IMG/VR virus record: IMGVR_UViG_3300011113_000805
Span: 193,179 to 257,178 of that record
Direction: 5' to 3' (one strand)
DNA: 64,000 nucleotides
A program made the translations under genes and the position numbers. The notes under the pieces were generated by a model. The model did no database searches. It was not told where the DNA came from and saw only the letters and a program-made list of their open reading frames with translations. Positions 10,776 to 34,092 of the stretch are shown here, piece by piece; position 1 is the first letter of the stretch; every line of letters begins with the position of its first letter.

Positions 10776-11291
10776 TCAAGAACCAGATCGAATGTGACTC
10801 AGAAACCATGTCGACAAGGCTTCCTTGGCATCTAAATATTCTGGAAGGTACACTAAATTGTCGACCAATTGACTAGCTGTGATCTTGGCATTCTCCGGCT
10901 TCATTGTCCCAATGAGCAAATTGCGGATTTTCACCTGGAGCCTGGAGCCTGTAATAGAGCATGCTCCCCGTTCGGGCATGTCCAGGATCCACGCGGCAGA
11001 GATGCTCCCGGGATCTTCTACCCATTGATCGATGAGGGCCAAGTCGTTGCGAGCCTCAGCATCCAACGGAATGCCTGCGCAGCCGGTGTGGGTACATACA
11101 CATTCAGTCATGATCTTATCAATGCACCAGCGTCCAATGAGCACAATGTCACGATGTGTGACGATGCCGACATGGGCTCCCTCGGGGTCGAAGAGCACAT
11201 GACCCGGCCGAGCAAGTCCACCCAAGGCGAGCCTCGTCGATGGAAACTTATCGCCCGTTTCCAGGTTGATGAAATAGTAATCGGTGTGCAT
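10776..11291 (-). CDS. Divergent member of the Ala-rich Imm5-like family (Ala tract replaced)
   Basis: HVGIVTHRDIV..RWC, LIDQWVEDP and WFLSHIRSG match the family core. Confidence 0.7.
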   Translation of the reverse strand: MHTDYYFINLETGDKFPSTRLALGGLARPGHVLFDPEGAHVGIVTHRDIVLIGRWCIDKIMTECVCTHTGCAGIPLDAEARNDLALIDQWVEDPGSISAAWILDMPERGACSITGSRLQVKIRNLLIGTMKPENAKITASQLVDNLVYLPEYLDAKEALSTWFLSHIRSGS

Positions 11292-11359: not shown

Positions 11360-11653
11360 CTAATTTTTTGATGTGTCTCGTTCAATGAAAGTAACGTCTT
11401 CCTCAACGATGCATATCCACTGAGGAGTTCCGTTGATGAGAAGATGAGCGTAACGCCGCGACATCGTACGGATGTGGGCCATTCTGGTCCAGGCATTCCA
11501 GAAGATATCTCGGCCTCGGCCAGTATATGCGGCATCCAACAGAAGACAGATACGATCTGTCTCATTGTCCCAGCCTCGATCACGCCAATAAAGCATGCCC
11601 CTGAGCAGGATGAGCTCACCAATATGGTCGTTGAGGCGACTAATGAAAGTCAT
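11360..11653 (-). CDS. SH3-like paralog family H protein
   Basis: H.G.LI.L...LYW...RGWD.ETDRIC.LLD...LLI.G.P.W. Confidence 0.7.
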   Translation of the reverse strand: MTFISRLNDHIGELILLRGMLYWRDRGWDNETDRICLLLDAAYTGRGRDIFWNAWTRMAHIRTMSRRYAHLLINGTPQWICIVEEDVTFIERDTSKN

Positions 11654-13524: not shown

Positions 13525-13725
13525 TTACCACCTCCGCCGAGCTGCACCGCCGGCACGTGCGATGTCGTCGAGAGTACAGGCGATCCCGCCCTCCGCGGAG
13601 GTGGTCCATTCCCGGATCTCTTTATTGAGATCACCCTCGTCGAGGATGATGTTGAGCCGCTCCTTGAGGTCAGTGAGGGCGGCATGGATAGCGGTGAGTT
13701 CGGCTTCGAGCTGGGAGTTCGTCAT
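13525..13725 (-). CDS. Hypothetical protein
   Basis: Start MTNSQLE after a type B element. Confidence 0.6.
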   Translation of the reverse strand: MTNSQLEAELTAIHAALTDLKERLNIILDEGDLNKEIREWTTSAEGGIACTLDDIARAGGAARRRW

Positions 13726-13819
13726 ATTCCTCTCCGTGATGTTATCTGTTATTATGGTGACGTCACTTTGTACAGGCACTTTGTGCAAAAAGCACAAATT
13801 TTTGATCACATCACAGTTA

Positions 13820-13904
13820 ACCAGAATGACCCAGGATAGGTTGCAAATTGCGGCCATGGTAACCTATGGATAGGTGCCTGCAATACATCCTGGGTCATTC
13901 AGGT
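13820..13904. repeat. Hairpin copy 2 (covarying homolog of 12655..12739)
   Basis: gaatgacccaggat / atcctgggtcattc; conserved loop ATGGTAAC.TATGGATA. Confidence 0.8.
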
Positions 13905-14189
13905 GCAACAGCGTTGACTTACATGGCCGACTCAAAGCTTCGGATTATCTATCCCTTCTGGCCCCGGAACAGCACCTCCATGAGGGATCAGGTGATGTTC
14001 GAGTTCTCAGCAGCTCGAGCGGCAGAAAGAAAGCTGAGCAGCCCCAGCGGAATCCAGGCAACATGCCAAGGTGCCGGGGCACCAATGGCGAAAAGGATCG
14101 CTCCGGAGGCGAAGAAGGCGCACATCACAGCATTGATATTCATGAGATTCCACAGAGTGATGAATGTTGTTATCGAGATATGCACGTCA

Positions 14190-14447: not shown

Positions 14448-14547
14448 ATTCCTCTCCGTGATGAGATCTGTTATTACGGTGCCGGTCATTTGTACAGGCA
14501 CCGCGAGCAAATAGTCGAAAGTTTTTGTCTCACCACGGGACGAGGTA

Positions 14548-15894
14548 TCAATTGCCAGGAAGGGGCTTCTTCATGTAGATGGCGGTCTCACGAGCATCCG
14601 GCTCACCCCAGGCAAGCTTCTGCCCAGGAACCAGAACCCAGGCCCGCCGGATCCGGGAGGCCGCCGGCTTCGAAGCGCCACCGTCGGTGAGGATGATGTA
14701 CCCCTCACACTTCGTCTTGTGGGCGTGCTTCGTCGGTGCATCGAAGTCGGTGCCTCCACAGCGGGTACGGAGGGTCTTCGGCACCGTGCCACGCTTCCAG
14801 GCCAGGGCGTTCTTCTCGTCCACCTCGGTGTCGAAGTAGTAGAGCATGAAGTTCACCCGATGGGAGAGGTGGGCAAGCTCACCGAAGAGGAGGGCGATGT
14901 CATCGTCGGACATGGAACCCGACTGGTCCAGGTAGACGTTGATGGTCGGGACATAGTCCCGGGTGGTGCCCGGGTGAATGCCCGGGTACTTCTTGTTGAG
15001 GCGGAAGACCGACGTCATCCGGTCGGCCCGCTGGGTGCAACCGACGAACTGCCGGAGGACTGCACGCCAGTCGATCTCCCCGATGACCTTCTTCCGGATC
15101 TCCTCCCGCATGGAGACAGGCACCGACCCCCAGGAGTTCTTGGCATCGGCACGCTCGGTCGCCGACTTCACGATCTGGCGCATCTTCCCGGCGACGAACT
15201 CACGATCCTCGTCACTGAGCTCATCCCATCCCTCATGAGAGTCCATCTCGCCGAGGCCGCCTTCACTCTCGCCGGCGCCAGAAGCCTGAGTGTACTCCTT
15301 GAAGTCGGGGTCCTGCATGAGACGAGCGAAGTACTCCTCGCTGGAGAGGTCACGAGGGAGACTCTGCACCAGAGTGCTTACCCGCTTGAGGAGGTCCTGT
15401 CGCTCCTGGGGGAGGGAGGCCATGTCCTTGGGCATCTTCAGCGCACGACCCGGAAGAAGACCACAGGCCGGCATCTCGTCTGCCGAGAGGGTGCAGTTGA
15501 TGGCGAGATCGGTGGCCCAGTTCCAGGCCAGGTGGGGCTGGTACCGGCGGGTCGTGGTGTGCTCGAGCGCGAGGTGCAACGCCTCGTGCTTCAGGATGCC
15601 TCGAACACCAGCCTCCGAGTAGGCCGCCAGGAAGAGCGGGTTCCACCAGAACCGCATGATGCCCTCCTTGAAGAGGACGCCGGCAGTGGGGATGCCTTCG
15701 GTCGCCTCCTTGTGGAGGCTCCGGACGATGTCGGCGTAGAAGGGCTCACGGAAGAGCAAGGCAACGAGATGGGCATCGATGTCGAACCCCGCCGCATCGG
15801 CCTTGAGGCGCTCGATGCTGCGCTCGGGGAAGTCAGGATGCTCAAAGTTGCCCTTGCGGACGAGGGTTTCAGCGGTGCCGGTGTCGTTGGCCAT
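14548..15894 (-). CDS. DUF2201-type putative metallopeptidase + VWA domain protein
   Basis: HEALH (HExxH), WNWATDLAIN, DQSGS (MIDAS), GGTDF, IILTDG. Confidence 0.85.
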   Translation of the reverse strand: MANDTGTAETLVRKGNFEHPDFPERSIERLKADAAGFDIDAHLVALLFREPFYADIVRSLHKEATEGIPTAGVLFKEGIMRFWWNPLFLAAYSEAGVRGILKHEALHLALEHTTTRRYQPHLAWNWATDLAINCTLSADEMPACGLLPGRALKMPKDMASLPQERQDLLKRVSTLVQSLPRDLSSEEYFARLMQDPDFKEYTQASGAGESEGGLGEMDSHEGWDELSDEDREFVAGKMRQIVKSATERADAKNSWGSVPVSMREEIRKKVIGEIDWRAVLRQFVGCTQRADRMTSVFRLNKKYPGIHPGTTRDYVPTINVYLDQSGSMSDDDIALLFGELAHLSHRVNFMLYYFDTEVDEKNALAWKRGTVPKTLRTRCGGTDFDAPTKHAHKTKCEGYIILTDGGASKPAASRIRRAWVLVPGQKLAWGEPDARETAIYMKKPLPGN

Positions 15895-15986
15895 GTTGCT
15901 TTCCTCTCGGTGATGATATCTATTATTCACTTTTGAGCCCGGAGGACACCCCTCGGCACACCTTTTTTGCAACTATTTTTAGAGGA

Positions 15987-16310
15987 TCAATCACCCAATT
16001 GATGGCCGGGCGGGACAATGCAGGTGTTGCCATTGGCGATGGCTGTGAGCTGCCCACTGTGGTAGAGGGCAATCCGACGGGCCGCGACCAGGTGCTTCCC
16101 GCTGAGCCGGCGGCCGGAACGGACCCACTCGGCATAGTAGGAACCAGACCGGCTGCTCCACCCAGCAAACCCACGACCATTGTGATGGCTGGCCGTCTGG
16201 GCAATCTGCTCATCGGCCGTTTGACGTTCCCAAAGAGCCACCATCGCACGCTCGACCCATCGATCCTGAGTTGAAAGCTTTTCTTCGATAGCTTCGCGGG
16301 TCCACTTCAT
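15987..16310 (-). CDS. Hypothetical phage protein
   Basis: Start MKWTRE after GGAG; RQTADEQ...NGRGF. Confidence 0.65.
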   Translation of the reverse strand: MKWTREAIEEKLSTQDRWVERAMVALWERQTADEQIAQTASHHNGRGFAGWSSRSGSYYAEWVRSGRRLSGKHLVAARRIALYHSGQLTAIANGNTCIVPPGHQLGD

Positions 16311-16421
16311 GTGATGTCTCCTGTGAAGTTGGTTAGATGCGAAAGTCGACCAGGCTTGGTCCTTCATGGAGGCGTCATTAGTATCGGCACTTTGTACAGG
16401 CGCCGAGAGAAAATAGCTGAA

Positions 16422-16913
16422 CTATTTTCCGGACTGGAGGTGTTCAACCAGCCACTTAGCTTGGACTTCGTACGAAGTAGCCTCGGCAGCCCGAGCAGCC
16501 CGAGCAGCAGCTCCAGCAGCACGAGCAGCCTCAGCAGCAGCCCAAGTAGCCCCAGCATCAGCAGCAGCAGCAGCCCAAGCAGCACGAGCAGCCCAAGCAG
16601 CAGCCCGAGCAACACGAGCAGCCCAAGCAGCAGCTTCCAGCTCCTCAGAAGTGATGCTCTTCTCATCCTCCAGCCACCGGTCCACCAAGGACAGGGCATG
16701 TGTCACACTCTGATCCGGCTCACGTCCTGATCGAGCCAGTGCCTCACCGGCACACCATCGGGAAAATGACACCAGGTCCCGATGGGTGATGATACCAATG
16801 TGCTCCCGGCCTTGCAGGAGGATGCAGTTGAGCTGGAGGTTTCGTGTCAGCTCTGCCTCAGACAGAGTCGTCTGCTCACCGGTGACGGGATCAACCAGGA
16901 CGTACTGGGTCAT
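16422..16913 (-). CDS. Ala-rich Imm5-like paralog
   Basis: GIITHRDLV.F.RWCA / VDRWLED / AAW-AAR tract / QA.WLVEHLQSGK. Confidence 0.8.
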   Translation of the reverse strand: MTQYVLVDPVTGEQTTLSEAELTRNLQLNCILLQGREHIGIITHRDLVSFSRWCAGEALARSGREPDQSVTHALSLVDRWLEDEKSITSEELEAAAWAARVARAAAWAARAAWAAAAADAGATWAAAEAARAAGAAARAARAAEATSYEVQAKWLVEHLQSGK

Positions 16914-16920
16914 GAGATAT

Positions 16921-16994
16921 CTCCGTGATGAGATCTGTTATTACGGTGCCGGCACTTTGTACAGGCACCGAGAGAAAATAGCTGAACTATTTTC
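16921..16994 (-). promoter_or_regulatory. Type B element with UP-region inverted repeat GAAAATAG-N5-CTATTTTC containing the upstream stop codon
   Basis: Representative full-length copy; palindromic spacer gtgccggcac. Confidence 0.75.
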
Positions 16995-17466
16995 CGGACT
17001 GGAGGTGCTCCACAAGCCACTTGGCTTGGGTTTCATATGAAGCAGCCTCAACAGCCCAAGCAGCCCGAGCAGCAGACCGAGCAGCCCAAGCAGCATCAGC
17101 AGCCCAAGTAGCATCAGCTGCAGCCCAAGCAGCCCAAGCAACATCAGCAGCATCAGCAGCAGCAGCCTCAGCAGCCCCAGCAGCAGCTTCCAGCTCCTCA
17201 GGAGTAACACTCTGCTGGTCCTCCAGCCATCGATCGACCATGGTCAGAGCATGGATCGACCTCTGATCAGGCTCATCCACCAGCAGCGTCAGCATCTCAC
17301 CGGCACACCACCGAGCAAATGCGACCAAGTCTCGGTGGGTGATGATGCCAATGTGCTCCCGGCCTTGCAGGAGCACGCAATTCTGTCTGAGGTTTCGTAT
17401 CAGTTCGACCTCAGGCAGAATCGACTGCTCACCGGTGACGGGATCGATCAAAGTGTACTGGTGCAT
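16987..17466 (-). CDS. Ala-rich Imm5-like paralog
   Basis: Family motifs; start MHQYTL. Confidence 0.8.
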   Translation of the reverse strand: MHQYTLIDPVTGEQSILPEVELIRNLRQNCVLLQGREHIGIITHRDLVAFARWCAGEMLTLLVDEPDQRSIHALTMVDRWLEDQQSVTPEELEAAAGAAEAAAADAADVAWAAWAAADATWAADAAWAARSAARAAWAVEAASYETQAKWLVEHLQSGK

Positions 17467-17538
17467 GTCGAGCTCCGTGATGAGATCTGTTATTATGGCT
17501 AAGCCACTTTGTACAGGTCCTGGGAGCAAATAGTTGAA

Positions 17539-18018
17539 CTATTTTCCGGACTGGAGGTGTTCAACCAGCCACTGAGTTTGAACTTCATATGAAGTAGCCC
17601 TGGCAGCAGTCTGAGCAGTCCGAGCAGCCCAAACAGCAGCCTCAGCAGCCCGATCAGCAGCCATGGTAGTAGTCCAAGAAGCAGCCTCAGCAGCCCGATC
17701 AGCAGCCATGGTAGCAGTCCGAGCATCATAAGCAGCAGCTACCAGCTCCTCAGAAGTGACGCTCTTCTCGTTCTCCAGCCACCGGTCCACCAAGGACAGG
17801 GCATGTGTCACCTTCAGGTCAGGCTCATCCACCAGCAGCGTCAACGTCTCACCGGCACACCATCGAGCAAAGGCGACCAGGTCCCGGTGGGTGATGATGC
17901 CCAGATGCTCATTCCCTCGAAGAAGGATGCAGCTGAGCTGGAGGTTTCGGGTGAGCTCAAGCTCCGACAGAGTCGTCTGCTCACCGGTGACGGGATCGAT
18001 CAAAGTGTACTGGTGCAT
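17539..18018 (-). CDS. Ala-rich Imm5-like paralog
   Basis: Family motifs; start MHQYTL. Confidence 0.8.
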   Translation of the reverse strand: MHQYTLIDPVTGEQTTLSELELTRNLQLSCILLRGNEHLGIITHRDLVAFARWCAGETLTLLVDEPDLKVTHALSLVDRWLENEKSVTSEELVAAAYDARTATMAADRAAEAASWTTTMAADRAAEAAVWAARTAQTAARATSYEVQTQWLVEHLQSGK

Positions 18019-18090
18019 GTCAAGCTCCGTGATGAGATCTGTTATTATGGCTGAGCCACTTTGTACAGGTCCTGGGAGCAAATAGTTGAA

Positions 18091-18567
18091 CTATTTTCCG
18101 GACTGGAGGTGCTCCACAAGCCACTGAGCTTGAGACTCGTACAAAAGCCCACGACTCCCAGCATCCCAAGCAGCCCCGGCAGCAGCCCAAGCAGCAGCCC
18201 CAGCAGTCCGAGCAGCCTCAGCAGCCTCAGCAGCAGCCCGAGCAGCCCGAGCAGCCTGAGCAGCCCGAGCAGCAGCCCCAGCAGCAGCTTCCAGCTCCTC
18301 AGGTGTAACACTCTGCTGATCCTCAAGCCACTGGTCCACCAAGGACAGGGCATGTGTCACCTTCAGGTCAGGCTCATCCACCAGCAGCGTCAGCGTCTCA
18401 CCGGCACACCATCGAGCAAAGGCGACCAGGTCCCGGTGGGTGATGATGCCCAGATGCTCATTCCCTCGAAGAAGGATGCAGCTGAGCTGGAGGTTTCGGG
18501 TGAGGTCGATCTCAGACAGAAAAGTTTGCTTACCGGTGACAGAATCAACCAAGGTGTACCGGGACAT
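18091..18567 (-). CDS. Ala-rich Imm5-like paralog
   Basis: Family motifs. Confidence 0.8.
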   Translation of the reverse strand: MSRYTLVDSVTGKQTFLSEIDLTRNLQLSCILLRGNEHLGIITHRDLVAFARWCAGETLTLLVDEPDLKVTHALSLVDQWLEDQQSVTPEELEAAAGAAARAAQAARAARAAAEAAEAARTAGAAAWAAAGAAWDAGSRGLLYESQAQWLVEHLQSGK

Positions 18568-18638
18568 GAGAACTCCGTGATGAGATCTGTTATTTCGGCT
18601 GAGTCGCTTTGTACAGGCGCCGACGGAAAATAGCTGAA

Positions 18639-19172
18639 CTATTTTCCGGACTGGAGGTGCTGCTCAAACCACTGAGCTTGGACTTCGTATGAAGTAGCTC
18701 CGGCAGCAGCTCCAGCAGCCCGAGCAGCCCAAACAGCAGCCTCAGCAGCCCGATCAGCAGCCATGGTAGCAGCCCAAGAAGCAGTCTGAGCAGCAGCATG
18801 AGCAGCCCAAGCAGCAGTCTGAGCAGCAATATGAGCAGCCCAAGAAGCCCGAGCAGCAGCCCAAGCAGCCTGAGCAGCTGCTTCAGCAGCGTCTTTCAGC
18901 TCCTCATTGCTGAGGCTCCTCTCATCCTCCAGCCACCGGTCCACCAAGGACAGGGCATGTGTCACCTTCAGGTCAGGCTCATCCACCAGCAGCTTCAGCA
19001 TCTCACCGGCACACCATCGAATGAAGATGACCAGGTCCCGGTGGGTGATGATGCCCAGATGCTCATTCCCTCGAAGAAGGAGGTAGCCAATCTGGAGGTT
19101 TCGGGTGAGCTTAAGCTCCGACAGAGTCCACTGCCGGCCGGTGGCAGGATCAATCAAAGTGTATTTAGGCAT
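18639..19172 (-). CDS. Ala-rich Imm5-like paralog
   Basis: Family motifs. Confidence 0.8.
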   Translation of the reverse strand: MPKYTLIDPATGRQWTLSELKLTRNLQIGYLLLRGNEHLGIITHRDLVIFIRWCAGEMLKLLVDEPDLKVTHALSLVDRWLEDERSLSNEELKDAAEAAAQAAWAAARASWAAHIAAQTAAWAAHAAAQTASWAATMAADRAAEAAVWAARAAGAAAGATSYEVQAQWFEQHLQSGK

Positions 19173-19628: not shown

Positions 19629-19713
19629 TGGTAGCCCCAGCCGGACTCGAACCGGCACGCTCAATGAACAAGAGATTTTGAGTCTCTCGCGTCTTCCGTT
19701 CCGCCATGGGGCC
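19629..19713 (-). tRNA. trnL: tRNA-Leu(CAA)
   Basis: Cloverleaf, long variable arm, CT-CAA-AA loop, GTTCGA, CCA. Confidence 0.92.
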
Positions 19714-19720
19714 AATGAAG

Positions 19721-19795
19721 TGGTGGGTCATCCGAGACTCGAACTCGGAACTAACGGATTAAGAGTCCGCTACTCTACCATTGAGTTAATGACCC
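19721..19795 (-). tRNA. trnK: tRNA-Lys(CTT)
   Basis: CT-CTT-AA loop, T arm, CCA. Confidence 0.95.
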
Positions 19796-19800
19796 GAAGA

Positions 19801-19876
19801 TGGTGGGTTGTCTGGGGCTTGAACCCAGGGCCTACGGATTAAAAGTCCGCTGCTCTACCGACTGAGCTAACAACCC
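19801..19876 (-). tRNA. trnK: tRNA-Lys(TTT)
   Basis: CT-TTT-AA loop, CCA. Confidence 0.95.
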
Positions 19877-19880
19877 ATAA

Positions 19881-19968
19881 TGGAGGAAGCGGTGGGATTC
19901 GAACCCACGATCCCTTTCAGGATGCCGGTTTTCAAGACCGGAGCCTTAAACCGCTCGGCCACGCTTCC
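19881..19968 (-). tRNA. trnS: tRNA-Ser(TGA)
   Basis: CT-TGA-AA loop, long variable arm, CCA. Confidence 0.95.
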
Positions 19969-19972
19969 AAGA

Positions 19973-20047
19973 TGGTACTCCCAACGGGAATCGAACCCGT
20001 GTTACCGGAGTGAAAATCCGGTGTCCTGACCGTTAGACGATGGGAGC
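19973..20047 (-). tRNA. trnE: tRNA-Glu(TTC)
   Basis: TT-TTC-AC loop, CCA. Confidence 0.95.
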
Positions 20048-20050
20048 GAA

Positions 20051-20124
20051 TGGTTGGGGTGGTAGGATTCGAACCCACATAGCCTGATCCAAAGTCAGGC
20101 GTCCTGCCGTTGGACGACACCCCA
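20051..20124 (-). tRNA. trnQ: tRNA-Gln(TTG)
   Basis: CT-TTG-GA loop, U1-A72, CCA. Confidence 0.95.
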
Positions 20125-20141
20125 GTAATGAAAGAATGAAG

Positions 20142-20218
20142 TGGTGCTGAAGGTGGGAATCGAACCCACGGCCTGCGGTTTACAAGACCGCTGCTCTGGC
20201 CAACTGAGCTACTTCAGC
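20142..20218 (-). tRNA. trnT: tRNA-Thr(TGT)
   Basis: CT-TGT-AA loop, CCA. Confidence 0.95.
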
Positions 20219-20460
20219 ATTTTCTCGGCCGTCGCCAGCGACTCATTCACATGAACCCAGCTGCCCTCCCGCAGGAGGATGACACAACCTCCGATAGGCC
20301 AATCCAACAGGGTCGGCGGCAACATGTTCCAGCTGCTCACCCCTGGAGGAAGAGGGTAAGGAATGCAGGTGAGGATCTCATCCCGAGTAAAGACCCGTTC
20401 GGGATAAGTCCACCCGCCGCCGGGGCCAGGGGTAACAATGCTGAAGGTGAGCTCTTCCAC
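20209..20460 (-). CDS. Hypothetical protein inside the tRNA cluster
   Basis: GTG start after GAGG; type A promoter at about 20482-20510; stop lies within tRNA-Thr. Confidence 0.5.
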   Translation of the reverse strand: MEELTFSIVTPGPGGGWTYPERVFTRDEILTCIPYPLPPGVSSWNMLPPTLLDWPIGGCVILLREGSWVHVNESLATAEKMLK

Positions 20461-20542
20461 GTCGACGTCCTCAGGATTAGAATATAATCACTTTGGTGAT
20501 TTTGAACAGGCGGTGCCTGCACTTTCTTCAACTTTTCTTGAG

Positions 20543-20618
20543 TGGCTCCGGCAACAGGACTCGAACCTGTGACCCGCGGATTAACAGTCCGCTGCTCTAC
20601 CGACTGAGCTATGCCGGA
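20543..20618 (-). tRNA. trnN: tRNA-Asn(GTT)
   Basis: CT-GTT-AA loop, CCA. Confidence 0.95.
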
Positions 20619-20623
20619 ATAAG

Positions 20624-20700
20624 TGGTCTCCTCGACAGGACTTGAACCTGTGACCCCCGCGTTAGGAATGCGGTGCTCTATCCAACTGAGCTACGAGGAG
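20624..20700 (-). tRNA. trnR: tRNA-Arg(CCT)
   Basis: TT-CCT-AA loop, A31-C39 mismatch, CCA. Confidence 0.9.
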
Positions 20701-20740: not shown

Positions 20741-21835
20741 TCACTTCTTCTTGTCGTTGATGGCCTGGGCGGCCTGGATGACGCTCATGATCTGGTCCTT
20801 CACCAGACCGTGAAACATCTTGATGTTGTTGCTGTTGCCGCTGCTCATGACACCGCTGTGCAGCGCCATCTTGCACTCACCGGTGAGGATGTCGAAGAAC
20901 TTCTTGAGGTTCCCCGCCTGGGCCAGGGTCCACTTGTTCTCCTTCGAGTGGTCCTTGATCTTTTCGATGATCGCCATCTTGCGCTCGGTGCTGAGCTCAC
21001 CGATACGGGCCTCCACCTTGGACCACCGGTTGAGGACGTCCTCCGCCGTGATGACGCTGCTGTAGTTCTTGACAAAGTCGACCAGGGCCGCGGAGGCCTC
21101 GACACCAACGAACCCCAGGGAGAGGGGGTAGAGGATGGCAGGAGGATTGCCACCGCATTCGGTGAGCTCGATGGCGGCCGCCTTCAGAGCACGGTCGAGC
21201 ATCGCCCAGGAGCGCTGGCTGGGAGCCACCTTGCCGGGCTCCACGGCCTTGGTGGGGCGGAGGTGAGCAGGCTGCAGCCGAATGAAGTCGATCAGCAGTT
21301 CATTGATGTCGCCCTCGGTCTTCGCCCAAACGAGCCAGTCCTCCACCGAGGGCTTGAACTCGACCACCCAGAACCGGCTCAGGAGGGCCGGGTCCATCTC
21401 GGAGACGGTGTAGTCACCGCCCCAGTTCACTGCCGCAACCACCTGGGTGCCCGGGTGCAGGCGCTTGGGCTTGCCGTCGGGACCGGACCCGAGCTCACGA
21501 TCCAGGACGATCTGGAACATGCTGTTCAGCACGCCGGGCAGGCCGCGGTTGAGCTCATCGAGGAAGAGGACGCAGGGCTCGTTGCAGGCCCGAACGTACC
21601 ACGACGGCAGCGCGAAGGAGGCGACACCGGTTTCCTTCGTACGCTCGAGGTCGGGGTAGCCGACGACATCACCTTCGGACATCGTGGAGGCACGCACGTC
21701 GATGAGCTCGAGGCCGCGGCGGTGGGCGAGCTGGTGAACGAGCTGGGACTTGCCAACACCGTGGTCGCCGCGGATGAGCACAGCCTGTGCGGCCGGGAGT
21801 GCATTGAGGCAGGTGACGAGGGTCTTCGCGTCCAT
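20741..21835 (-). CDS. MoxR-like AAA+ ATPase
   Basis: Walker A GDHGVGKS, Walker B LFLDELNR, MDPALLSRF. Confidence 0.88.
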   Translation of the reverse strand: MDAKTLVTCLNALPAAQAVLIRGDHGVGKSQLVHQLAHRRGLELIDVRASTMSEGDVVGYPDLERTKETGVASFALPSWYVRACNEPCVLFLDELNRGLPGVLNSMFQIVLDRELGSGPDGKPKRLHPGTQVVAAVNWGGDYTVSEMDPALLSRFWVVEFKPSVEDWLVWAKTEGDINELLIDFIRLQPAHLRPTKAVEPGKVAPSQRSWAMLDRALKAAAIELTECGGNPPAILYPLSLGFVGVEASAALVDFVKNYSSVITAEDVLNRWSKVEARIGELSTERKMAIIEKIKDHSKENKWTLAQAGNLKKFFDILTGECKMALHSGVMSSGNSNNIKMFHGLVKDQIMSVIQAAQAINDKKK

Positions 21836-21947
21836 GATGACGTCCTTTTCCTGAGGGTTTGTGGGGTTTCGGAACCATTCCGCCCCAACAAGATGAATAT
21901 AATCACTTTCGGTCAAGTTGAACAGGTACCGGAGCACCTTTTTGCAA

Positions 21948-22250
21948 CTATTTTCCGATCAACTTGAAATGCCTGATGTGCAACTCGAGGATCTCGCCCT
22001 CGTACATGACCTTCACATACACGTTGCGGAGGGCAAGGTTATCGGTGGCCACCATCCCCAGCCCGAAGATCCAGACCGTCGGCCCTTCGACAATGACGCC
22101 AATGGCGCCGCGACCCATGTGGGGAATCGAAACCAACGCGCCGGGAACCCAGGCTTTGTTGGTGATCGTCCGGTTCTGTCCAGGACCCTTCTGGTGAACC
22201 ACCCGTTTCTTGGGCTGAATGGGCTTTTCACTCAGTGTGCGACGCTTCAT
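21948..22250 (-). CDS. Hypothetical protein
   Basis: ORF whose TAG lies in the UP element of the next promoter. Confidence 0.55.
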   Translation of the reverse strand: MKRRTLSEKPIQPKKRVVHQKGPGQNRTITNKAWVPGALVSIPHMGRGAIGVIVEGPTVWIFGLGMVATDNLALRNVYVKVMYEGEILELHIRHFKLIGK

Positions 22251-23638: not shown

Positions 23639-23784
23639 GAGACGCTCCGGCGCAGGGAGGAACCATTCCGCCCCAACATGTACTGTTATTTCGGTGGGTG
23701 CACTTTGTACAGGTCTCCGGAGCACCTTTTTGCACATTTTTGTGCAATGCTCCGGAGATAGCATGTCACCGACGACGCCCTATG

Positions 23785-24045: not shown

Positions 24046-24140
24046 TGCTGACTCCGTATGTGAGAGGAAACCATCAACCAACATGATCTGTTATTATGGT
24101 GTCGGCACTTTGTACAGGCACCGTGAGCAAATAGTTGAAA

Positions 24141-24659
24141 CTATTTTCCGGACTGGAGATGCTCGACCCACCACTGGGCCTGGGCTTCATATGAAGTGTA
24201 ATCCCGAGAAACCTGAGAAGTAGCCATGGCTGCATTTGAAGCCCCGTCACCATACACAGCTGCACGCTGCGCGGCAGCCTGGGCAGTCCAAGTGGCAGTT
24301 CGGGCAGCAACAAAAGCAACCAGTGGCGCAGCATCAGTAATAGCAGGAGCAGCAGCCCAAGCAGCAGCACGAGCAGCCGCTTCCAGCTCCTCAGAAGTGA
24401 CGCTCTTCTCATCTTCAAGCCACCGGTCCACCAAGGACAATGCATGGGCCACCCTCTGATTAGGCTCGCCTTTCAATCGAGCCAGCGTCTCATTGGTGCA
24501 CCATCGAGCGAAGAGAACTAAGTCTCGGTGAGTGACGATACCGAGGTGCTCCTGGTCTCGGAAGAGAATACAGTTGAGCCTGATATTTTGGGTAAGCTCA
24601 AGCTCCGACAGCGTGTGCTGCTCGCCGGTGACAGGATCGATCAGGGTGTACCGGGCCAT
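24141..24659 (-). CDS. Ala-rich Imm5-like paralog
   Basis: Family motifs; start MARYTL. Confidence 0.8.
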   Translation of the reverse strand: MARYTLIDPVTGEQHTLSELELTQNIRLNCILFRDQEHLGIVTHRDLVLFARWCTNETLARLKGEPNQRVAHALSLVDRWLEDEKSVTSEELEAAARAAAWAAAPAITDAAPLVAFVAARTATWTAQAAAQRAAVYGDGASNAAMATSQVSRDYTSYEAQAQWWVEHLQSGK

Positions 24660-24733
24660 GAGAACTCCGTGATGAGATCTGTTATTATGGTGCCCGCACT
24701 TTGTACAGGCTCCGGAGCACCTTTTTGCAAAAA

Positions 24734-25198
24734 TTATTGAGCCGACCTCAGGTGCTCCACCAGCCATTGGGCTTGGGCTTCGAAGGAAACACCGGCAGAG
24801 TTATTAGCAGCCCATGCAGCAGACCCAGCAACATCAGCAGCGCCGGCAGCACTAGAAGCAGCCCAAGCAGCCCGCGCAGCAACAGCACCAGGGCAAGCAA
24901 CATCAGCAGCGGCAGCAGCCTGTTTCAGCTCCTCACTGGAGGCAGAACCCGGGTCGATCAGCCACTTGTCGACCAGGCCCAGCGCAGTATAGACTTCAGG
25001 GGGAACCGTGTGACACTGAGCAAGAGTCTTCTCAACACACCACCGACAGAAGGAGACAACATCGCGATGTGTGATGACGCCGATGTGTTCATCCCCACGA
25101 AGGAGGATATGATTGACCCGCATATGATGTGTCAGTTCCGACGCAGCTACCGTCGACGTGCCACCGGTGAATGGATTCAGGAGGGTATACCGGGTCAT
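24734..25198 (-). CDS. Ala-rich Imm5-like paralog
   Basis: Family motifs; start MTRYTL; TAA stop. Confidence 0.8.
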   Translation of the reverse strand: MTRYTLLNPFTGGTSTVAASELTHHMRVNHILLRGDEHIGVITHRDVVSFCRWCVEKTLAQCHTVPPEVYTALGLVDKWLIDPGSASSEELKQAAAAADVACPGAVAARAAWAASSAAGAADVAGSAAWAANNSAGVSFEAQAQWLVEHLRSAQ

Positions 25199-29529: not shown

Positions 29530-30015
29530 TTATTGACCGGACTGGAGGTGTTCAACCAGCCACTGAGCTTGGGCTTCATATGAAACAGCCCAAGTAGCAC
29601 GAGCAGCCCAAGTAGCATGAACAGTAGCCCGAGCAACATCAGAAGCAGCCCAAGCAGCCCGAGCAGCAGCCCAAGCAGTAGCCCGAGCAGCAGCCCGAGC
29701 AGTAGCCCCAGCATCCCAAGCATCAAAAGCAGCAGCTACCAGCTCCTCAGAAGTGATGCTCTTCTCATTCTCCAGCCACCGGTCCACCAAGGACAGGGCA
29801 TGTGTCACAGTGTGATCCGGTTCACATTTCAGTCGAGCCAAAATCTTACCAGCGCACCACCGAGTGAAGATGACTAGGTCCCGGTGGGTGATGATTCCCA
29901 AATGCTCCCGGCCTTGAAGAAGAACGCAATTGAGCTGAAGGTTTTGGGTGAGCTCTGCCTCAAACAGAGTCGTCTGCCGGCCGGTGACCGGATCAATCAA
30001 TGTGTATTGGGCCAC
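29530..30015 (-). CDS. Ala-rich Imm5-like paralog
   Basis: Family motifs; GTG start. Confidence 0.8.
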   Translation of the reverse strand: MAQYTLIDPVTGRQTTLFEAELTQNLQLNCVLLQGREHLGIITHRDLVIFTRWCAGKILARLKCEPDHTVTHALSLVDRWLENEKSITSEELVAAAFDAWDAGATARAAARATAWAAARAAWAASDVARATVHATWAARATWAVSYEAQAQWLVEHLQSGQ

Positions 30016-30088
30016 GTCAAATCTCCGTGATGAGATCTGTTATTTCAGCACCGGCACTTTGTACAAGCGCCGAGAGAAAATAGCTGAA

Positions 30089-30574
30089 CTATTTTCCGGA
30101 CTGAAGGTGTTCAACCAGCCACTGAGCCTGAGACTTGTAAGAAAGCCCACGATCCTCAGCAGACCGAGCAACATCAGCAGCAACCCAAATAGCCCGAGCA
30201 GCCCGAGCAGCAGCCCAAGCAGCATCAGCAGCAGCCCAAATAGCCCGAGCAGCGTCAGCAGCATCAACAGCAGCCCAAGCAACCTCAGCGACGGCTTCCA
30301 GCTCCTCAGGAGTAACTCTCTTTTCATCCTCCAGCCACCGATCGACCAGGGTCAAGGCATACTGTGCCTCAGGAGTCGATGTGCCCTTCGCTCGAGCAAT
30401 TGCCTCCATGGCACACCACCGAGCAAAGGCGACCAAGTCTCGGTGGGTGATGATACCAATGTGCTCCCGGCCTTGCAGGAGGATGTAGTTAGGAGCGAGG
30501 TTTTGTGTCAGCTCGACCTCAGACAGAGTCGTCTGCTGGCCGGTAATAGGATCGATCAGTGTGTACAGGTGCAT
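30089..30574 (-). CDS. Ala-rich Imm5-like paralog
   Basis: Family motifs; start MHLYTL. Confidence 0.8.
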   Translation of the reverse strand: MHLYTLIDPITGQQTTLSEVELTQNLAPNYILLQGREHIGIITHRDLVAFARWCAMEAIARAKGTSTPEAQYALTLVDRWLEDEKRVTPEELEAVAEVAWAAVDAADAARAIWAAADAAWAAARAARAIWVAADVARSAEDRGLSYKSQAQWLVEHLQSGK

Positions 30575-30647
30575 GTCGAGCTCCGTAATGAGATCTGTTA
30601 TTACAGTGCCGGCACTTTGTACAGGCACCGCGAGCAAATAGTCGAAA

Positions 30648-31151
30648 CTATTTTTCGGACCGCAGATGCTCCACCAGCCACTGAGCTTGGACTTCGTACG
30701 AAGCAGTCTGAGTAGCCCGAGTAACCCAAGCAGTCCGAGCAGCAGCCCGAGTAGCCCAAGCAACAGCCTCAGCAGCAGCCCAAGCAGCCCCAGCAACAGC
30801 CTCAGTAGTAGCTCCAGCAGCCCAAGCAACAGCCTCAGCAGCCTGAGCAGCCCCAGCAGCCCGAGCAGCAGCTTCCAGCTCCTCAGGAGTAACACTCTGC
30901 TGGTCCTCCAGCCACCGGTCCACCAAGGACAGGGCATGTGTCACCTTCAGGTCAGGCTCATCCACCAGTCGAGCCAGCATCTTACCAGCGCACCACCGAG
31001 CAAAGGCGACCAAGTCTCGGCGGGTGATGATGCCAATGTGCTTCCTATCTTGAAGAAGAATGCAATTGAGCTGAAGGTTTCGTGTCAGCTCTGCCTCAGA
31101 CAGAGTCGTCTGCTGGCCGGTGGCAGGATCGATCAGTGTGTATTGGGCCAT
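30648..31151 (-). CDS. Ala-rich Imm5-like paralog
   Basis: Family motifs. Confidence 0.8.
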   Translation of the reverse strand: MAQYTLIDPATGQQTTLSEAELTRNLQLNCILLQDRKHIGIITRRDLVAFARWCAGKMLARLVDEPDLKVTHALSLVDRWLEDQQSVTPEELEAAARAAGAAQAAEAVAWAAGATTEAVAGAAWAAAEAVAWATRAAARTAWVTRATQTASYEVQAQWLVEHLRSEK

Positions 31152-31225
31152 GTCAAATCTCCGTGATGAGACCTGTTATTTCAGTACCGGCACTTTGTAC
31201 AGGTCCTGGGAGCAAATAGTCGAAA

Positions 31226-31768
31226 CTATTTTCCGGACTGGAGGTGTTCAACCAGCCAACATGCTTGGGCTTCATATGAAGCAATCTCAGTAGCCTCAGC
31301 AGCCCAAGCAGCCCGAGCAGCAGCCCAAGCAGCCTGAGCAGCAAACCGAGCAGCCTCAGCAGCAGCCCAAGCAGCCTCAACAGCCCAAGCAGCCCGAGCA
31401 GCAGCCCAAGCAGCCCCAGCAACAGCCTGAGCGGCAGTCCAAGCAGCAGCCTCAGCAGTCCGAGCAGCCCAAGCAGCATCAGCAGCAGCTTTCAGCTCCT
31501 CAGGAGTAACACTCTGCTGATCCTCCAGCCACTGGTCGACCATGGTCAGAGTATGTGTCACCTTCAGGTCAGGCTCATCCACCAGTCGAGCCAGCATCTT
31601 ACCAGCGCACCACCGAGCAAAGGCGACCAAGTCTCGATGGGTGATGATGCCAATGTGCTCCCCATCTCGAAGGAGGATGCAGCCAATCTGGAGGTTTCGG
31701 GTGAGCTCTACCTCAGACAGAGTCGTCTGCCGGCCGGTGGCAGGATCGATCAGTGTGTATTGGGCCAT
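31226..31768 (-). CDS. Ala-rich Imm5-like paralog
   Basis: Family motifs. Confidence 0.8.
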   Translation of the reverse strand: MAQYTLIDPATGRQTTLSEVELTRNLQIGCILLRDGEHIGIITHRDLVAFARWCAGKMLARLVDEPDLKVTHTLTMVDQWLEDQQSVTPEELKAAADAAWAARTAEAAAWTAAQAVAGAAWAAARAAWAVEAAWAAAEAARFAAQAAWAAARAAWAAEATEIASYEAQACWLVEHLQSGK

Positions 31769-31841
31769 GTCAAATCTCCGTGATGAGACCTGTTATTTCA
31801 GTACCGGCACTTTGTACAGGTCCCGGGAGCAAATAGCTGAA

Positions 31842-32327
31842 CTATTTTCCGGACTGGAGGTGCTCAACAAACGTTTGTGCTTGAGCTTCATAAGTGATGA
31901 TAGCATGATAATCAAGTGACCAGGCTATTTCAGCAATAATCTCCAAGGCCCAATTAGCATTGGCAATAACCCGCACCGGAGAAGCAATAATCCAATCCGG
32001 TGACCATATAGAAGTCTCACCATTGGTGATCACATATCCTGCAATGAAGTCAAGTTGTTCACAGGACAGGCTATTTGGATCCTCTAACCATTGATCGGCT
32101 AGCTGTATAGCATACAAAGAATCTGGTTCCGGTAGTTCGATCATCCGATTCTTTATCACATCTGCACACCGTCGAGCGAAGACGACCAAGTCTCTATATG
32201 TAACGACACCAATATGGTTATTCCCTTGAAGAAGAATGCAATTAAGCATAAGATTTTGCAATAGCTCGGTTTTAGGTACAGTTTTGCTAAAGCCTGTGAA
32301 AGGATTGATTAGAGTGTAATGGATCAT
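31842..32327 (-). CDS. Divergent Imm5-like paralog (non-repetitive middle)
   Basis: Family N- and C-termini; Ala tract replaced by AT-rich sequence. Confidence 0.75.
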   Translation of the reverse strand: MIHYTLINPFTGFSKTVPKTELLQNLMLNCILLQGNNHIGVVTYRDLVVFARRCADVIKNRMIELPEPDSLYAIQLADQWLEDPNSLSCEQLDFIAGYVITNGETSIWSPDWIIASPVRVIANANWALEIIAEIAWSLDYHAIITYEAQAQTFVEHLQSGK

Positions 32328-32399
32328 AGGAATTCCATGATGAGATCTGTTATTACAGTGCCGGCACTTTGTACAGGCACCGCGAGCAAATAGTCGAAA

Positions 32400-32525
32400 C
32401 TATTTTTCGGACCGCAGATGCTCCACCAGCCACTGAGCTTGAGACTTGTTGTGCTCCTCATCTCGAAGGAGGATGCAATCCTGCCTGAGGTTTCGTGTCA
32501 GCTCGACCTTGGACAGGTCGCCCAC
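32400..32525 (-). pseudogene. In-frame deletion remnant of an Imm5-like paralog
   Basis: LSKVELTRNLRQDCILLRDEEH fused to KSQAQWLVEHLRSEK*. Confidence 0.7.
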
Positions 32526-32533
32526 CGGCCGGG

Positions 32534-32959
32534 TCAGGCCACCCTCTTCGATCCGCCCTTCTTGGGGGCAACCGGGCCGCGGAAGACCAGGGTGTTGACC
32601 ACTCCCAAGTACCCGATCGGCTCCCCCTCAGCAGCCTTCTGCATCGCCTCGGAGGCTACCTCGTCGAGGCCTTCGGACCCTGGCACGGAGAATGCCACGT
32701 CCACGTCAGAGTCGTCACGGAACCTGTTCCTCTCAAGAACGGAGCCGATGATCCACACGGACACCTCCTCCGCTGGGAGGTCGAGGACCTCCGCGGCCAG
32801 TTCCTTGAGGGAGGGTGCGGCGCCGGCCACGGCGCGGATGGCATCCTTTCTGTACGCGTCGAGGTCGGGGTCTTGGGAGGCAAGGACCTCGTTGAGGGAA
32901 TGTGTCACTTCTTCACGGATGATAGACTTGAGCTTGGATAACTTTATCTTCATGGGCAA
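32534..32959 (-). CDS. Leader-bearing minimal nucleotidyltransferase (Pol-beta/MNT fold)
   Basis: IIGSVL...DSDVDV; leader LSKLKSIIREEV...LNE. Confidence 0.75.
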   Translation of the reverse strand: MPMKIKLSKLKSIIREEVTHSLNEVLASQDPDLDAYRKDAIRAVAGAAPSLKELAAEVLDLPAEEVSVWIIGSVLERNRFRDDSDVDVAFSVPGSEGLDEVASEAMQKAAEGEPIGYLGVVNTLVFRGPVAPKKGGSKRVA

Positions 32960-33042
32960 TAAGTATGTCTGCCGCCGAGAAACCCATTAAAGAATAAAAG
33001 CGGGTCAAGTCGTGCGGGCTGTTTGGAGCAACTTTTGTATCT

Positions 33043-33525: not shown

Positions 33526-33600
33526 GTCCAGGACTCCGTGATGAGATCTGTTATTTCGGCTGAGTCGCTTTGTACAGGCACCGCGAGCAAATAGTCGAAA

Positions 33601-34092
33601 CTATTTTTCGGACCGCAGATGCTCCACCAGCCAACGTGCTTGGGCTTCATATGAAGCAATCTCAGCAGCAATCTCGACAGCAGCCCAAGTAGCATGAGCA
33701 GCGGCCTGAGCAGCCGTGGTAGCAGCCCAAGCAGCCCGAGCAGCAGCCCAAGCAGTAGCCCGAGCAGCAGCCCGAGCAGCAGCCCCAGCATCCCAAGCAT
33801 CAAAAGCAGCAGCTTCCAGCTCCTCATTGCTGACGCTCTGTTGGTCCTCCAACCACCGGTCGACCAGGATCAAGGCATACTGCGTCTCAGGAGCAGGTGT
33901 GCCCTTCACTCGAGCCAGTGTCTCAACTGCTAGCCATCGAACAAAGACAACCAGATCCCTATGGGTAACAATGCCAATATGCTCATTCTCTCGAGCAAGA
34001 ATGTCATTGCTGGCTATTTTTCGTGTTAGATCATGCTCTTGTACAATTTTGTTCATTCCCGTAATGGGATTAATTAGTGTATACTCTGTCAT
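33601..34092 (-). CDS. Ala-rich Imm5-like paralog
   Basis: Family motifs. Confidence 0.8.
   Translation of the reverse strand: MTEYTLINPITGMNKIVQEHDLTRKIASNDILARENEHIGIVTHRDLVVFVRWLAVETLARVKGTPAPETQYALILVDRWLEDQQSVSNEELEAAAFDAWDAGAAARAAARATAWAAARAAWAATTAAQAAAHATWAAVEIAAEIASYEAQARWLVEHLRSEK

What the first reader, a model, noticed from the sequence alone, without database searches (positions are those of the whole stretch)
16974..16994. Stop codon of each cassette is supplied by an inverted repeat in the next promoter
AAATAG-N5/6-CTATTT overlaps the gene end, so paralogs end SGK* or SEK* within it. The unrelated gene 21948..22250 also ends IGK* in the equivalent sequence. Copies not followed by the IR (24734, 29530, 33043) end SAQ* or SGQ* with TAA. 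This marks a precise cassette junction and a possible recombinase or repressor site.
Basis: seen in the sequence. Interest (0 to 1): 0.6.

Follow-up and report, generated by a model that had tools for sequence, protein, structure and literature searches.

The report
Stop-codon hairpin in phage promoter cassettes
In the variable region of a large T4-like phage, a short AT-rich inverted repeat that holds the stop codon of each copy of a repeated gene belongs to a recurring stem-loop-plus-promoter spacer of a kind already described in T4-like phages, so it is real but fairly ordinary.

Summary
AAATAG-N5/6-CTATTT occurs 12 times in the window (0.03 expected) and nowhere else in the 257-kb phage record. 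Each copy holds the TAG stop of a paralogous ~160-aa gene in its 5' arm. It lies 10 nt upstream of a conserved box (CCTGTACAAAG), a -10-like motif, an SD and the next ATG.

The phage is T4-like (Gp23 capsid), and the region is a hyperplastic island of ORFans and tRNAs. The same promoter-like module precedes about 22 genes, many of them unrelated, and some carry other AT-rich upstream elements.

The closest known thing is the PeSL (promoter-early stem-loop) cassette of T4-like phages. Its published description already includes upstream stop codons lying in the AT-rich region, and a subclass with the stem-loop in that region.

- The stop sits at the same alignment column in every paralog, with or without the repeat.
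- Some relatives carry their own stop followed by a complete separate repeat.
- Blocks of identity run straight through the repeat.
- Exchange points also lie at the box, the -10-like motif and the SD.
- No recombinase gene was found.

One natural two-gene indel against a relative shows homologous recombination between modules. Whether the repeat acts as an RNA hairpin or as a protein-binding site is unresolved, because covariation evidence is weak.

The parts
16976..16992 (-). Focal inverted repeat. In gene direction: 5' arm AAATAG at 16992-16987 (last codon AAA plus stop TAG at 16989-16987), loop TTCAG at 16986-16982, 3' arm CTATTT at 16981-16976.
16987..17466 (-). Paralog P4, whose stop lies in the focal repeat (ends ..EHLQSGK*).
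16955..16965 (-). Conserved box CCTGTACAAAG, 10 nt downstream of the repeat. Putative promoter element of the next gene; the assignment is inferred.
   Evidence: mean pairwise identity 0.98
16935..16943 (-). Conserved -10-like motif TAATAACAG. It is followed by the conserved leader, SD GGAG (16921-16924) and ATG (16911-16913).
16422..16913 (-). Paralog P5, the gene served by the focal module. Its own stop lies in the repeat at 16411-16427.
16411..16427 (-). Repeat copy after P5. It is followed by a truncated module and the unrelated 126-aa gene 15987-16367 (phrog_21015).
17528..17544 (-). Repeat copy (loop TTCAA) between paralogs P3 and P4.
18080..18096 (-). Repeat copy (loop TTCAA) between paralogs P2 and P3.
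18628..18644 (-). Repeat copy (loop TTCAG) between paralogs P1 and P2.
24129..24146 (-). Repeat copy (loop TTTCAA) after paralog 24141-24659. It is followed by an unrelated 99-aa gene with a chimeric leader.
30078..30094 (-). Repeat copy (loop TTCAG) in array C.
30636..30653 (-). Repeat copy (loop TTTCGA, SEK*) in array C.
31214..31231 (-). Repeat copy (loop TTTCGA) in array C. Its loop and spacer combination is mosaic.
31831..31847 (-). Repeat copy (loop TTCAG) in array C.
32388..32405 (-). Repeat copy after an internally deleted paralog remnant (about 32403-32520).
33589..33606 (-). Repeat copy (loop TTTCGA, SEK*). Its module is chimeric at the box: the left half matches 30636, the right half matches 18628.
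14454..14526 (-). Module after the DUF2201 gene. The loop and 3' arm are present, but the 5' arm reads AAAAAC. It is the product, or the empty site, of a two-paralog indel relative to L017 and L005.
21926..21950 (-). End of the unrelated gene 21948-22250 (IGK*). The first arm only, joined to an A-tract type upstream element of a class-2 promoter.

Best explanation
The repeat is the stem-loop part of a composite intergenic cassette of the PeSL type, in the hyperplastic region of a T4-like jumbo phage.

Each cassette runs from the stop codon of the upstream gene to the start of the next gene. In order it holds an AT-rich element, a GC-rich 10-nt spacer, the box CCTGTACAAAG, a -10-like AATAACAG, a conserved short leader with GGAG, and the ATG.

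In the variant that follows the paralogs, the distal AT-rich part (AAATAG, which is Lys plus stop) is matched by a complementary proximal part (CTATTT). The transcript, or single-stranded DNA, can therefore form a 6-8 bp hairpin.

I infer three things:
- The hairpin acts as a weak attenuator, insulator or 3'-end structure for transcription coming from the upstream copy.
- The AT-rich tract serves the downstream promoter.
- The stop codon lies in the arm simply because coding and regulatory sequence are packed together.

The many near-identical cassettes give short patches of homology. The phage's general recombination system can use these to duplicate, delete and reshuffle genes. That is how the 14-copy family and the copy-number differences from relatives arose.

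Shown here: the anatomy, the conservation, the T4-like setting, the mosaicism and one homologous-recombination indel. Inferred: promoter activity, hairpin function and the timing of expression.
For: - T4-like setting: a Gp23 major capsid hit, E 1.6e-63.
- Hyperplastic region: ORFans without Pfam families, a 9-tRNA array, and many indels against relatives.
- Recurring module: it precedes about 22 genes between window 11.3 and 33.6 kb, all on the minus strand and including unrelated genes.
- Conserved islands: arms, box and -10-like motif have mean pairwise identity 0.97-0.98. They lie in variable sequence: loop 0.66, spacer 0.61, segment before the -10-like motif 0.61, synonymous third positions 0.67.
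- Hairpin strength: -3.2 to -7.9 kcal/mol for repeat variants against -0.1 to -2.6 for variants without the repeat. In context the z-scores range from -1.0 to -3.2.
- Signs of pairing rather than a fixed-spacing site: the loop varies in length (N4-N6) and in sequence while the arms stay fixed. One junction has a compensated pair, AATTAG/CTAATT. The first and last loop bases are always T..A or T..G, which pair only on the sense strand.
- The repeat is kept where it is not needed for the stop: L019 has its own TAG or TAA followed by a complete repeat.
- A natural indel: relatives L017 and L005 carry two paralogs between DUF2201 and the next gene. The window carries one chimeric module, with the crossover somewhere in a shared 33-nt stretch.
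- Published PeSL description: upstream stop codons lie in the AT-rich region, one subclass has the stem-loop in that region, and recombination between PeSLs was in one case mapped to the loop (PMC2839356).
Against: - The class-1 module does not match a sigma-70 consensus, and the repeat is not called as an intrinsic terminator because the stem is AT-rich with one G-C pair. Promoter and terminator functions therefore rest on position and conservation only.
- Covariation is thin: 1 compensated pair out of 8, a value reached by 32 of 500 shuffles. The invariant arms fit a sequence-specific protein site equally well.
- Several modules work, presumably, without the repeat: 24709, 19225, and L007:589 with AAAGTT. 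So the repeat is dispensable for the promoter.
- No RNA or read data could be obtained.
Confidence: 0.55

Rival explanations
1. The repeat is a double-stranded operator for a dimeric phage or host regulator, either a repressor or an upstream activator. The regulator would sit at about -46 to -62 of each paralog promoter and co-regulate the family.
For: - Two 6-bp half-sites are almost invariant in 24 of 30 distinct junctions, while the loop and the spacer vary.
- Covariation is too weak to prove pairing.
- The position upstream of a promoter-like box is constant at 10 nt.
Against: - Half-site spacing varies between N4, N5 and N6, and N5 and N6 are about equally common. That is unusual for a rigid dimer.
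- One junction changes both arms in a compensating way.
- About 30 ORFs of the window were scanned and none has a DNA-binding domain.
- Promoters of the same class lack the repeat.
Confidence: 0.15
2. The repeat has no function of its own. It is a relic carried along by tandem duplication and gene conversion of a unit that happened to contain a Lys-stop codon pair and a complementary AT-rich tract.
For: - All copies lie in paralogous units.
- The first arm is constrained by coding (Lys plus stop), and any promoter-upstream tract would be AT-rich.
- Several junctions have replaced the second arm wholesale with AAAGTT and still keep the box.
Against: - The non-coding second arm is far better conserved (0.97) than the loop and the spacer that flank it (0.61-0.66) and than synonymous sites (0.67). 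This holds across contigs whose paralogs are only 50-70% identical.
- One pair is compensated.
- L019 keeps a complete repeat separate from the stop.
Confidence: 0.2
3. The repeat is a site-specific recombination site, like an integron attC, that marks exact cassette boundaries.
For: - Some homology breaks fall in or next to the loop: L006:2971 keeps the arm and loop and then diverges; window 14498 keeps the loop and second arm only; AAATAGTTTCAA|AAAGTT hybrids exist.
- All four combinations of two loop types and two spacer types exist.
Against: - No tyrosine or serine recombinase was found in the 257-kb record, although the record is only 76% complete.
- Identity blocks run through the repeat.
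- Haplotype excess is as high across the box (16 against 11) and the -10-like motif (21 against 16) as across the second arm (16 against 10).
- Another indel ends in SD microhomology.
- Every cassette has its own promoter-like module, unlike integron cassettes.
Confidence: 0.04

Closest known systems
PeSL (promoter-early stem-loop) cassettes of T4-like myoviruses (Arbiol et al. 2010, PMC2839356; Comeau et al. 2014, PMC4122927)
   Same: - It is a repeated intergenic composite motif in the hyperplastic region of a T4-like phage, next to ORFans.
- It starts at the upstream stop codon in an AT-rich tract, then has promoter boxes, and ends with the SD and ATG.
[quoted passage not shown]
- Indels against close relatives are explained by recombination between motifs.
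   Different: - The stem is AT-rich and weak (-3 to -8 kcal/mol), not the GGGG..CCCC type shown to terminate transcription.
- The main promoter class does not match the sigma-70 consensus: the box sits about 12 nt upstream of a -10-like AATAACAG.
- The stop codon is inside the stem itself, and the motif flanks a 14-copy paralog family rather than single ORFans.
- No functional data and no mini-circle data exist.
Integron attC sites and gene cassettes
   Same: An imperfect inverted repeat lies at the 3' end of each gene of an array, and gene content of the array is variable.
   Different: - No integrase was found.
- Each gene has its own promoter-like module.
- Exchange points are not confined to the repeat.
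- The arms are only 6-8 bp long.
Intrinsic (Rho-independent) terminators
   Same: A hairpin directly after the coding end, followed in some copies by TTTTCTCTC.
   Different: The stem has only one G-C pair, the consensus scan does not call it, and the T-run is part of the stem.
UP elements and the AT-rich upstream regions of T4 early promoters
   Same: AT-rich tracts upstream of the promoter box. Variants without the repeat carry an A-tract (GCAAAAAGG) at the same place.
   Different: The tracts lie about 5 nt further upstream than canonical UP subsites, and a GC-rich spacer separates them from the box. These positions depend on a transcription start that is only inferred.

Membership tests
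PeSL cassettes of T4-like phages | The genome is a T4-like myovirus. | tested here: met
   PF07068 (Gp23) matches with E 1.6e-63 in an open 642-aa frame at G000:C1:82694-84352.
PeSL cassettes of T4-like phages | Motifs are concentrated in a hyperplastic region rich in ORFans. | tested here: met
   All class-1 modules lie at window 11.3-33.6 kb. The genes there have no Pfam family apart from MoxR, DUF2201 and a KaiC-like ATPase. There are many indels against relatives.
PeSL cassettes of T4-like phages | A composite motif running from the upstream stop codon in an AT-rich tract through promoter boxes to the SD and ATG. | tested here: met
   The stop lies 24-27 nt upstream of the box in 17 of 25 modules.
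PeSL cassettes of T4-like phages | A promoter matching the host sigma-70 consensus (early promoter). | tested here: inconclusive
   Class 2 has TGTTCA-N17-TATATT. Class 1, which is the class next to the repeat, is not called by the consensus scan. The host is unknown.
PeSL cassettes of T4-like phages | A stable stem-loop that terminates or attenuates transcription. | tested here: inconclusive
   A hairpin is present but weak, -3.2 to -7.9 kcal/mol. It is not terminator-like by the scan. Function is not testable here.
PeSL cassettes of T4-like phages | Recombination between motifs explains indels between close relatives. | tested here: met
   A two-paralog indel has its crossover inside a 33-nt stretch shared by the flanking modules. 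Chimeric modules also exist.
PeSL cassettes of T4-like phages | Formation of mini-circles. | not testable with these tools
   This needs inverse PCR or reads.
Integron attC / cassette | A linked IntI-type tyrosine recombinase. | tested here: not met
   PF00589 has no match in the record although the controls rang. PF00239 also has no match. The record is 76% complete.
Integron attC / cassette | Exchange confined to one point of the repeat. | tested here: not met
   breaks occur at the box, at the -10-like motif, at the SD and within the gene.
Dimeric-regulator operator | Palindromic half-sites at a fixed spacing. | tested here: not met
   Spacing is N4, N5 or N6. Among the 25 distinct junctions that have both arms, N6 occurs 15 times and N5 10 times. 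N4 occurs in L005.
Dimeric-regulator operator | A cognate DNA-binding protein is encoded nearby. | tested here: inconclusive
   No HTH or other DNA-binding family was found in about 30 scanned ORFs. Most of these are ORFans, so a novel binder cannot be excluded.
Intrinsic terminator | A G+C-rich stem followed by a T-run. | tested here: not met
   None of the repeats is among the terminator-like sites. The stem has one G-C pair.

The most novel reading that the evidence does not exclude
The hairpin that contains the stop codon could be a translation-sensing switch. A ribosome terminating at the TAG in the 5' arm would cover the whole 17-nt repeat and keep it unfolded. Attenuation, processing or the 3'-end structure would then form only on untranslated transcripts.

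In addition or instead, the hairpin could be a preferred entry point for the phage recombination machinery. That would drive rapid diversification of a 14-copy family, faintly Imm5-like, with a hypervariable Ala/Trp repeat.
Probability: 0.1. Interest if true: 0.6.

Novelty: new member of a known kind. Interest (0 to 1): 0.3.

Why it matters
It extends the PeSL idea to an uncultured freshwater T4-like jumbo phage. PeSL cassettes are small terminator/promoter units that both regulate and shuffle accessory genes. Here the cassettes have multiplied one gene family to 14 copies, and the stem-loop is an AT-rich hairpin built partly from the last codon and the stop codon.

That is useful for annotating such phages: gene ends, promoters and hot regions for indels. 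It also gives a clean natural example of module-to-module recombination. It does not reveal a new mechanism.

Tried and rejected
- Protein-guided scan of IMG/VR: no relatives beyond the window's own record.
- Exact scan of IMG/VR for box plus -10-like motif: four isolated chance hits with no similar context. The module is specific to this clade.
- GenBank phages: only a tRNA/attP match.
- Rfam: only the nine tRNAs.
- Sigma-70 and terminator scan: calls neither the module nor the repeat.
- MotA and AsiA families: no match, but the controls were silent, so this is uninformative.
- The paralog family: no Pfam family at 0.01. There is a faint Imm5_like hit, E 0.0056, in 2 of 15 members. The PDB gave no match by sequence or by fold, despite a fair model.
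- Site-specific recombination site: considered and rejected. There is no recombinase, and the breaks are scattered.
- Canonical terminator: considered and rejected.
- Stop codon created by fusion to the next cassette: considered and rejected, because the stop is at the same column in all paralogs.
- Costly searches left unused: I ran no further search on the 100-aa gene 21948-22250 to see how distant homologues end.

Full report
**What is there.** The window is the last 64 kb of a 257,178-bp linear virus record, estimated 76% complete. The record encodes a T4-type major capsid protein (PF07068, E 1.6e-63), so it is a T4-like jumbo phage. Window positions of about 10-34 kb form an island of 55-60% G+C in a genome of 40-45%. 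The island holds:
- a 9-tRNA array;
- a MoxR-type AAA ATPase, a DUF2201 VWA/metallopeptidase protein and a KaiC-like ATPase;
- many small ORFs with no family;
- 14 full copies of a ~155-180-aa paralog family, one divergent copy and one internally deleted remnant, all on the minus strand.

**The observation.** AAATAG-N5/6-CTATTT occurs 12 times in the window, against 0.03 expected from shuffles, and nowhere else in the record. In gene direction every copy reads ..TCC GGA (or GAA) AAA TAG, then a loop, then CTATTT. The last sense codon and the TAG therefore form the 5' arm.

Eleven copies follow full paralogs and one follows the remnant at 32403-32520. Ten are followed by another paralog and two by unrelated genes (16411 and 24129).

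The three paralogs ending at 24734, 29530 and 33043 end SAQ*/SGQ* with TAA and lack the repeat. The unrelated gene 21948-22250 ends IGK* in GGAAAATAGTT but has only the first arm. The caveat is that the 12 copies are paralogous, not independent.

**The module around it.** Ten nucleotides after the repeat comes an almost invariant box, CCTGTACAAAG. A variable 11-14 nt follows, often a short GC-rich palindrome. Then come AATAACAG, a conserved leader ending in GGAG, and the ATG.

The same box/-10-like/leader unit precedes about 22 genes between 11.3 and 33.6 kb, always on the minus strand, and many of them are not paralogs. A second class, CCTGTTCAA-N14-GATTATATT, has a sigma-70-like -10 and a long conserved leader. 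Chimeras of the two classes exist (23713, 24118).

Upstream of the box these modules carry different AT-rich elements:
- the repeat;
- an A-tract type (..TTGCAAAAAGGTGCTCC);
- other palindromes such as TTTGTGC-N5-GCACAAA and TTGCACA-N4-TGTGCAA.

In 17 of 25 modules the upstream stop codon lies 24-27 nt before the box, at the 5' edge of the AT-rich element. The same edge, AAAATAGTTGCAAAAA, lies 9 nt after the own TGA of the 126-aa gene 15987-16367. So it belongs to the module, not to any one gene.

**Conservation.** I collected relatives from freshwater metagenome contigs by protein search and contig look-up. The 30 distinct TAG-type junctions followed by the box divide as follows:

| Junction type | Count |
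|---|---|
| Perfect 6-bp arms (one compensated, AATTAG/CTAATT with SGN*) | 24 |
| One mismatch | 2 |
| Complete repeat 2 nt after the gene's own stop | 1 |
| Second arm replaced by AAAGTT | 3 |

Mean pairwise identity by segment is:

| Segment | Identity |
|---|---|
| Arms | 0.97 |
| Box | 0.98 |
| -10-like motif | 0.98 |
| Loop | 0.66 |
| Spacer | 0.61 |
| Segment before the -10-like motif | 0.61 |
| Synonymous third positions of the last 11 codons | 0.67 |

The sample for these identity values was chosen with a pattern that allowed little arm variation, so one search is the unbiased count.

Loop length is N4-N6. The first loop base is always T and the last is A or G, giving a seventh U-A or U.G pair on the sense strand only.

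Hairpins alone fold at -3.2 to -7.9 kcal/mol, against -0.1 to -2.6 for variants without the repeat. In context, z-scores against shuffles range from -1.0 to -3.2.

Formal covariation is weak. One of eight pairs has a double change, a value reached by 32 of 500 shuffles.

**Is the stop 'supplied' by the next promoter?** Partly. The stop is embedded in a module element that also ends unrelated genes: 21948, and probably 11360-11653, whose TAG lies in an imperfect AAATTAG-CAA-CTATTT. But three facts limit the claim:
- The stop is at the same alignment column in all 15 paralogs, whether they end K-TAG, Q-TAA or S-TGA.
- More distant homologues have longer tails, but the whole clade near this phage ends three residues after EHLx.
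- In L019, seen on six contigs, the genes end with their own TAG or TAA and a complete repeat follows 2 nt later. In L007 a TGA two codons earlier ends the gene.

The overlap is therefore a packing arrangement, not a junction that creates the stop.

**Is it a precise cassette junction?** No. Pairwise high-identity blocks among the 13 junctions of the window mostly run from about -30, through the repeat, promoter and N-terminal half of the next gene, to +250. The variable part is the Ala/Trp-rich repeat inside the gene.

Blocks that do end near the module end at the box (+23, or +34 to +44), after the -10-like motif (+57), or before the SD (+61 to +63).

Haplotype excess between neighbouring variable segments is similar across three islands:

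| Interval | Haplotypes observed | Minimum needed |
|---|---|---|
| Across the second arm | 16 | 10 |
| Across the box | 16 | 11 |
| Across the -10-like motif | 21 | 16 |

Two natural indels against relatives are informative.
- L017 and L005 carry two paralogs between DUF2201 and the next gene. The window has a single chimeric module there. The crossover lies somewhere in a 33-nt stretch shared by the flanking modules (loop, second arm, spacer and box).
- A 445-nt indel ends in GGAGGTG microhomology at two SD sites.

No tyrosine or serine recombinase was found. Some homology breaks do fall at the loop (L006:2971, window 14498, the AAAGTT hybrids). This echoes the one PeSL crossover mapped to a loop in RB49, but they are a minority.

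**Comparison with what is known.** PeSL cassettes of T4-like phages are repeated intergenic motifs in hyperplastic regions, next to ORFans. [quoted passage not shown] They end with the SD and the start codon.

[quoted passage not shown] Recombination between PeSLs explains indels and forms mini-circles (PMC2839356; also PMC4122927).

The present modules meet the tested structural and evolutionary criteria. They differ in the weak AT-rich stem, in a main promoter class that does not fit sigma-70, and in flanking a large paralog family. I file this as a new member of a known kind.

**What remains open.**
- Whether the repeat acts as an RNA or single-strand hairpin (my preference, on loop-length variation, the compensated pair, the sense-strand wobble and the separate repeat in L019), as a protein site, or not at all.
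- Whether the box/-10-like unit is really a promoter, and of which temporal class.
- What the paralogs do. There is only a faint Imm5_like signal and no structural match.

Noticed in passing
window 19629-20700 (-): An array of nine tRNA genes (Leu-CAA, Lys-CTT, Lys-TTT, Ser-TGA, Glu-TTC, Gln-TTG, Thr-TGT, Asn-GTT, Arg-CCT). It lies between paralog array A and the MoxR-like ATPase gene. Part of one tRNA-Lys matches the Haemophilus phage HP1 attP/tRNA region.
   Followed up: partly
window 16422-19172, 24141-25198, 29530-34092, 10776-11291 (-): A paralog family of 14 full copies and one divergent copy. It has a well-folded N-terminal domain (pLDDT above 85), a hypervariable Ala/Trp-rich repeat (pLDDT below 50) and a conserved C-terminal helix. 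It has no Pfam family, only a faint Imm5_like hit (E 0.0056 in 2 of 15), and no PDB fold match. Copy number differs between related contigs: 5 copies against 2 next to the tRNAs, and 0 against 2 after DUF2201.
   Followed up: partly
window 32403-32520 (-): An internally deleted paralog remnant. An N-terminal piece (..ELTRNLRQDCILLRDEEH) is fused in frame to the C-terminal piece (NKSQAQWLVEHLRSEK*). It still carries the repeat and a full module.
   Followed up: partly
window about 10000-34000: An island of 52-60% G+C in a phage genome of about 40-45% G+C. All class-1 modules and all paralogs lie in it.
   Followed up: no
window 1849, 10743, 20510, 21926, 23382, 28380 (-): A second promoter-like class, CCTGTTCAA-N14-GATTATATT, with a sigma-70-like -10. 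Several copies have a long conserved leader that contains a GGGG..CCCC-type hairpin. Chimeras of the class-1 box with the class-2 leader lie at 23713 and 24118.
   Followed up: partly
window 16944-16954 and the equivalent place in the other modules: A short GC-rich palindrome between the box and the -10-like motif (GTGCC|GGCAC). Its variants keep complementarity, partly through G.T pairs: TGGCTnAGCCA, GTACC|GGTGC, GTGTT|GATGC. This may be a second stem of the PeSL 'between -35 and -10' type.
   Followed up: no
window about 13540-13980 against L017:4632: A 445-nt segment holding one module and one small gene is present in the window and absent from the relative. Both end points lie in GGAGGTG (SD) microhomology.
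   Followed up: yes
L019:1199-1232 and L019:1750-1790: A relative in which the gene end GGAAAATAG (or ..TAA) is followed by TG and then a complete AAAATAG-N5/6-CTATTT(T). The first arm is in effect duplicated. Seen on six contigs.
   Followed up: partly
window 14548-15897 and 20741-21937 (-): A DUF2201 (VWA-like plus putative metallopeptidase) gene and a MoxR-type AAA ATPase gene are usually partners. Here they are separated by about 5 kb holding the paralog array and the tRNA array.
   Followed up: no
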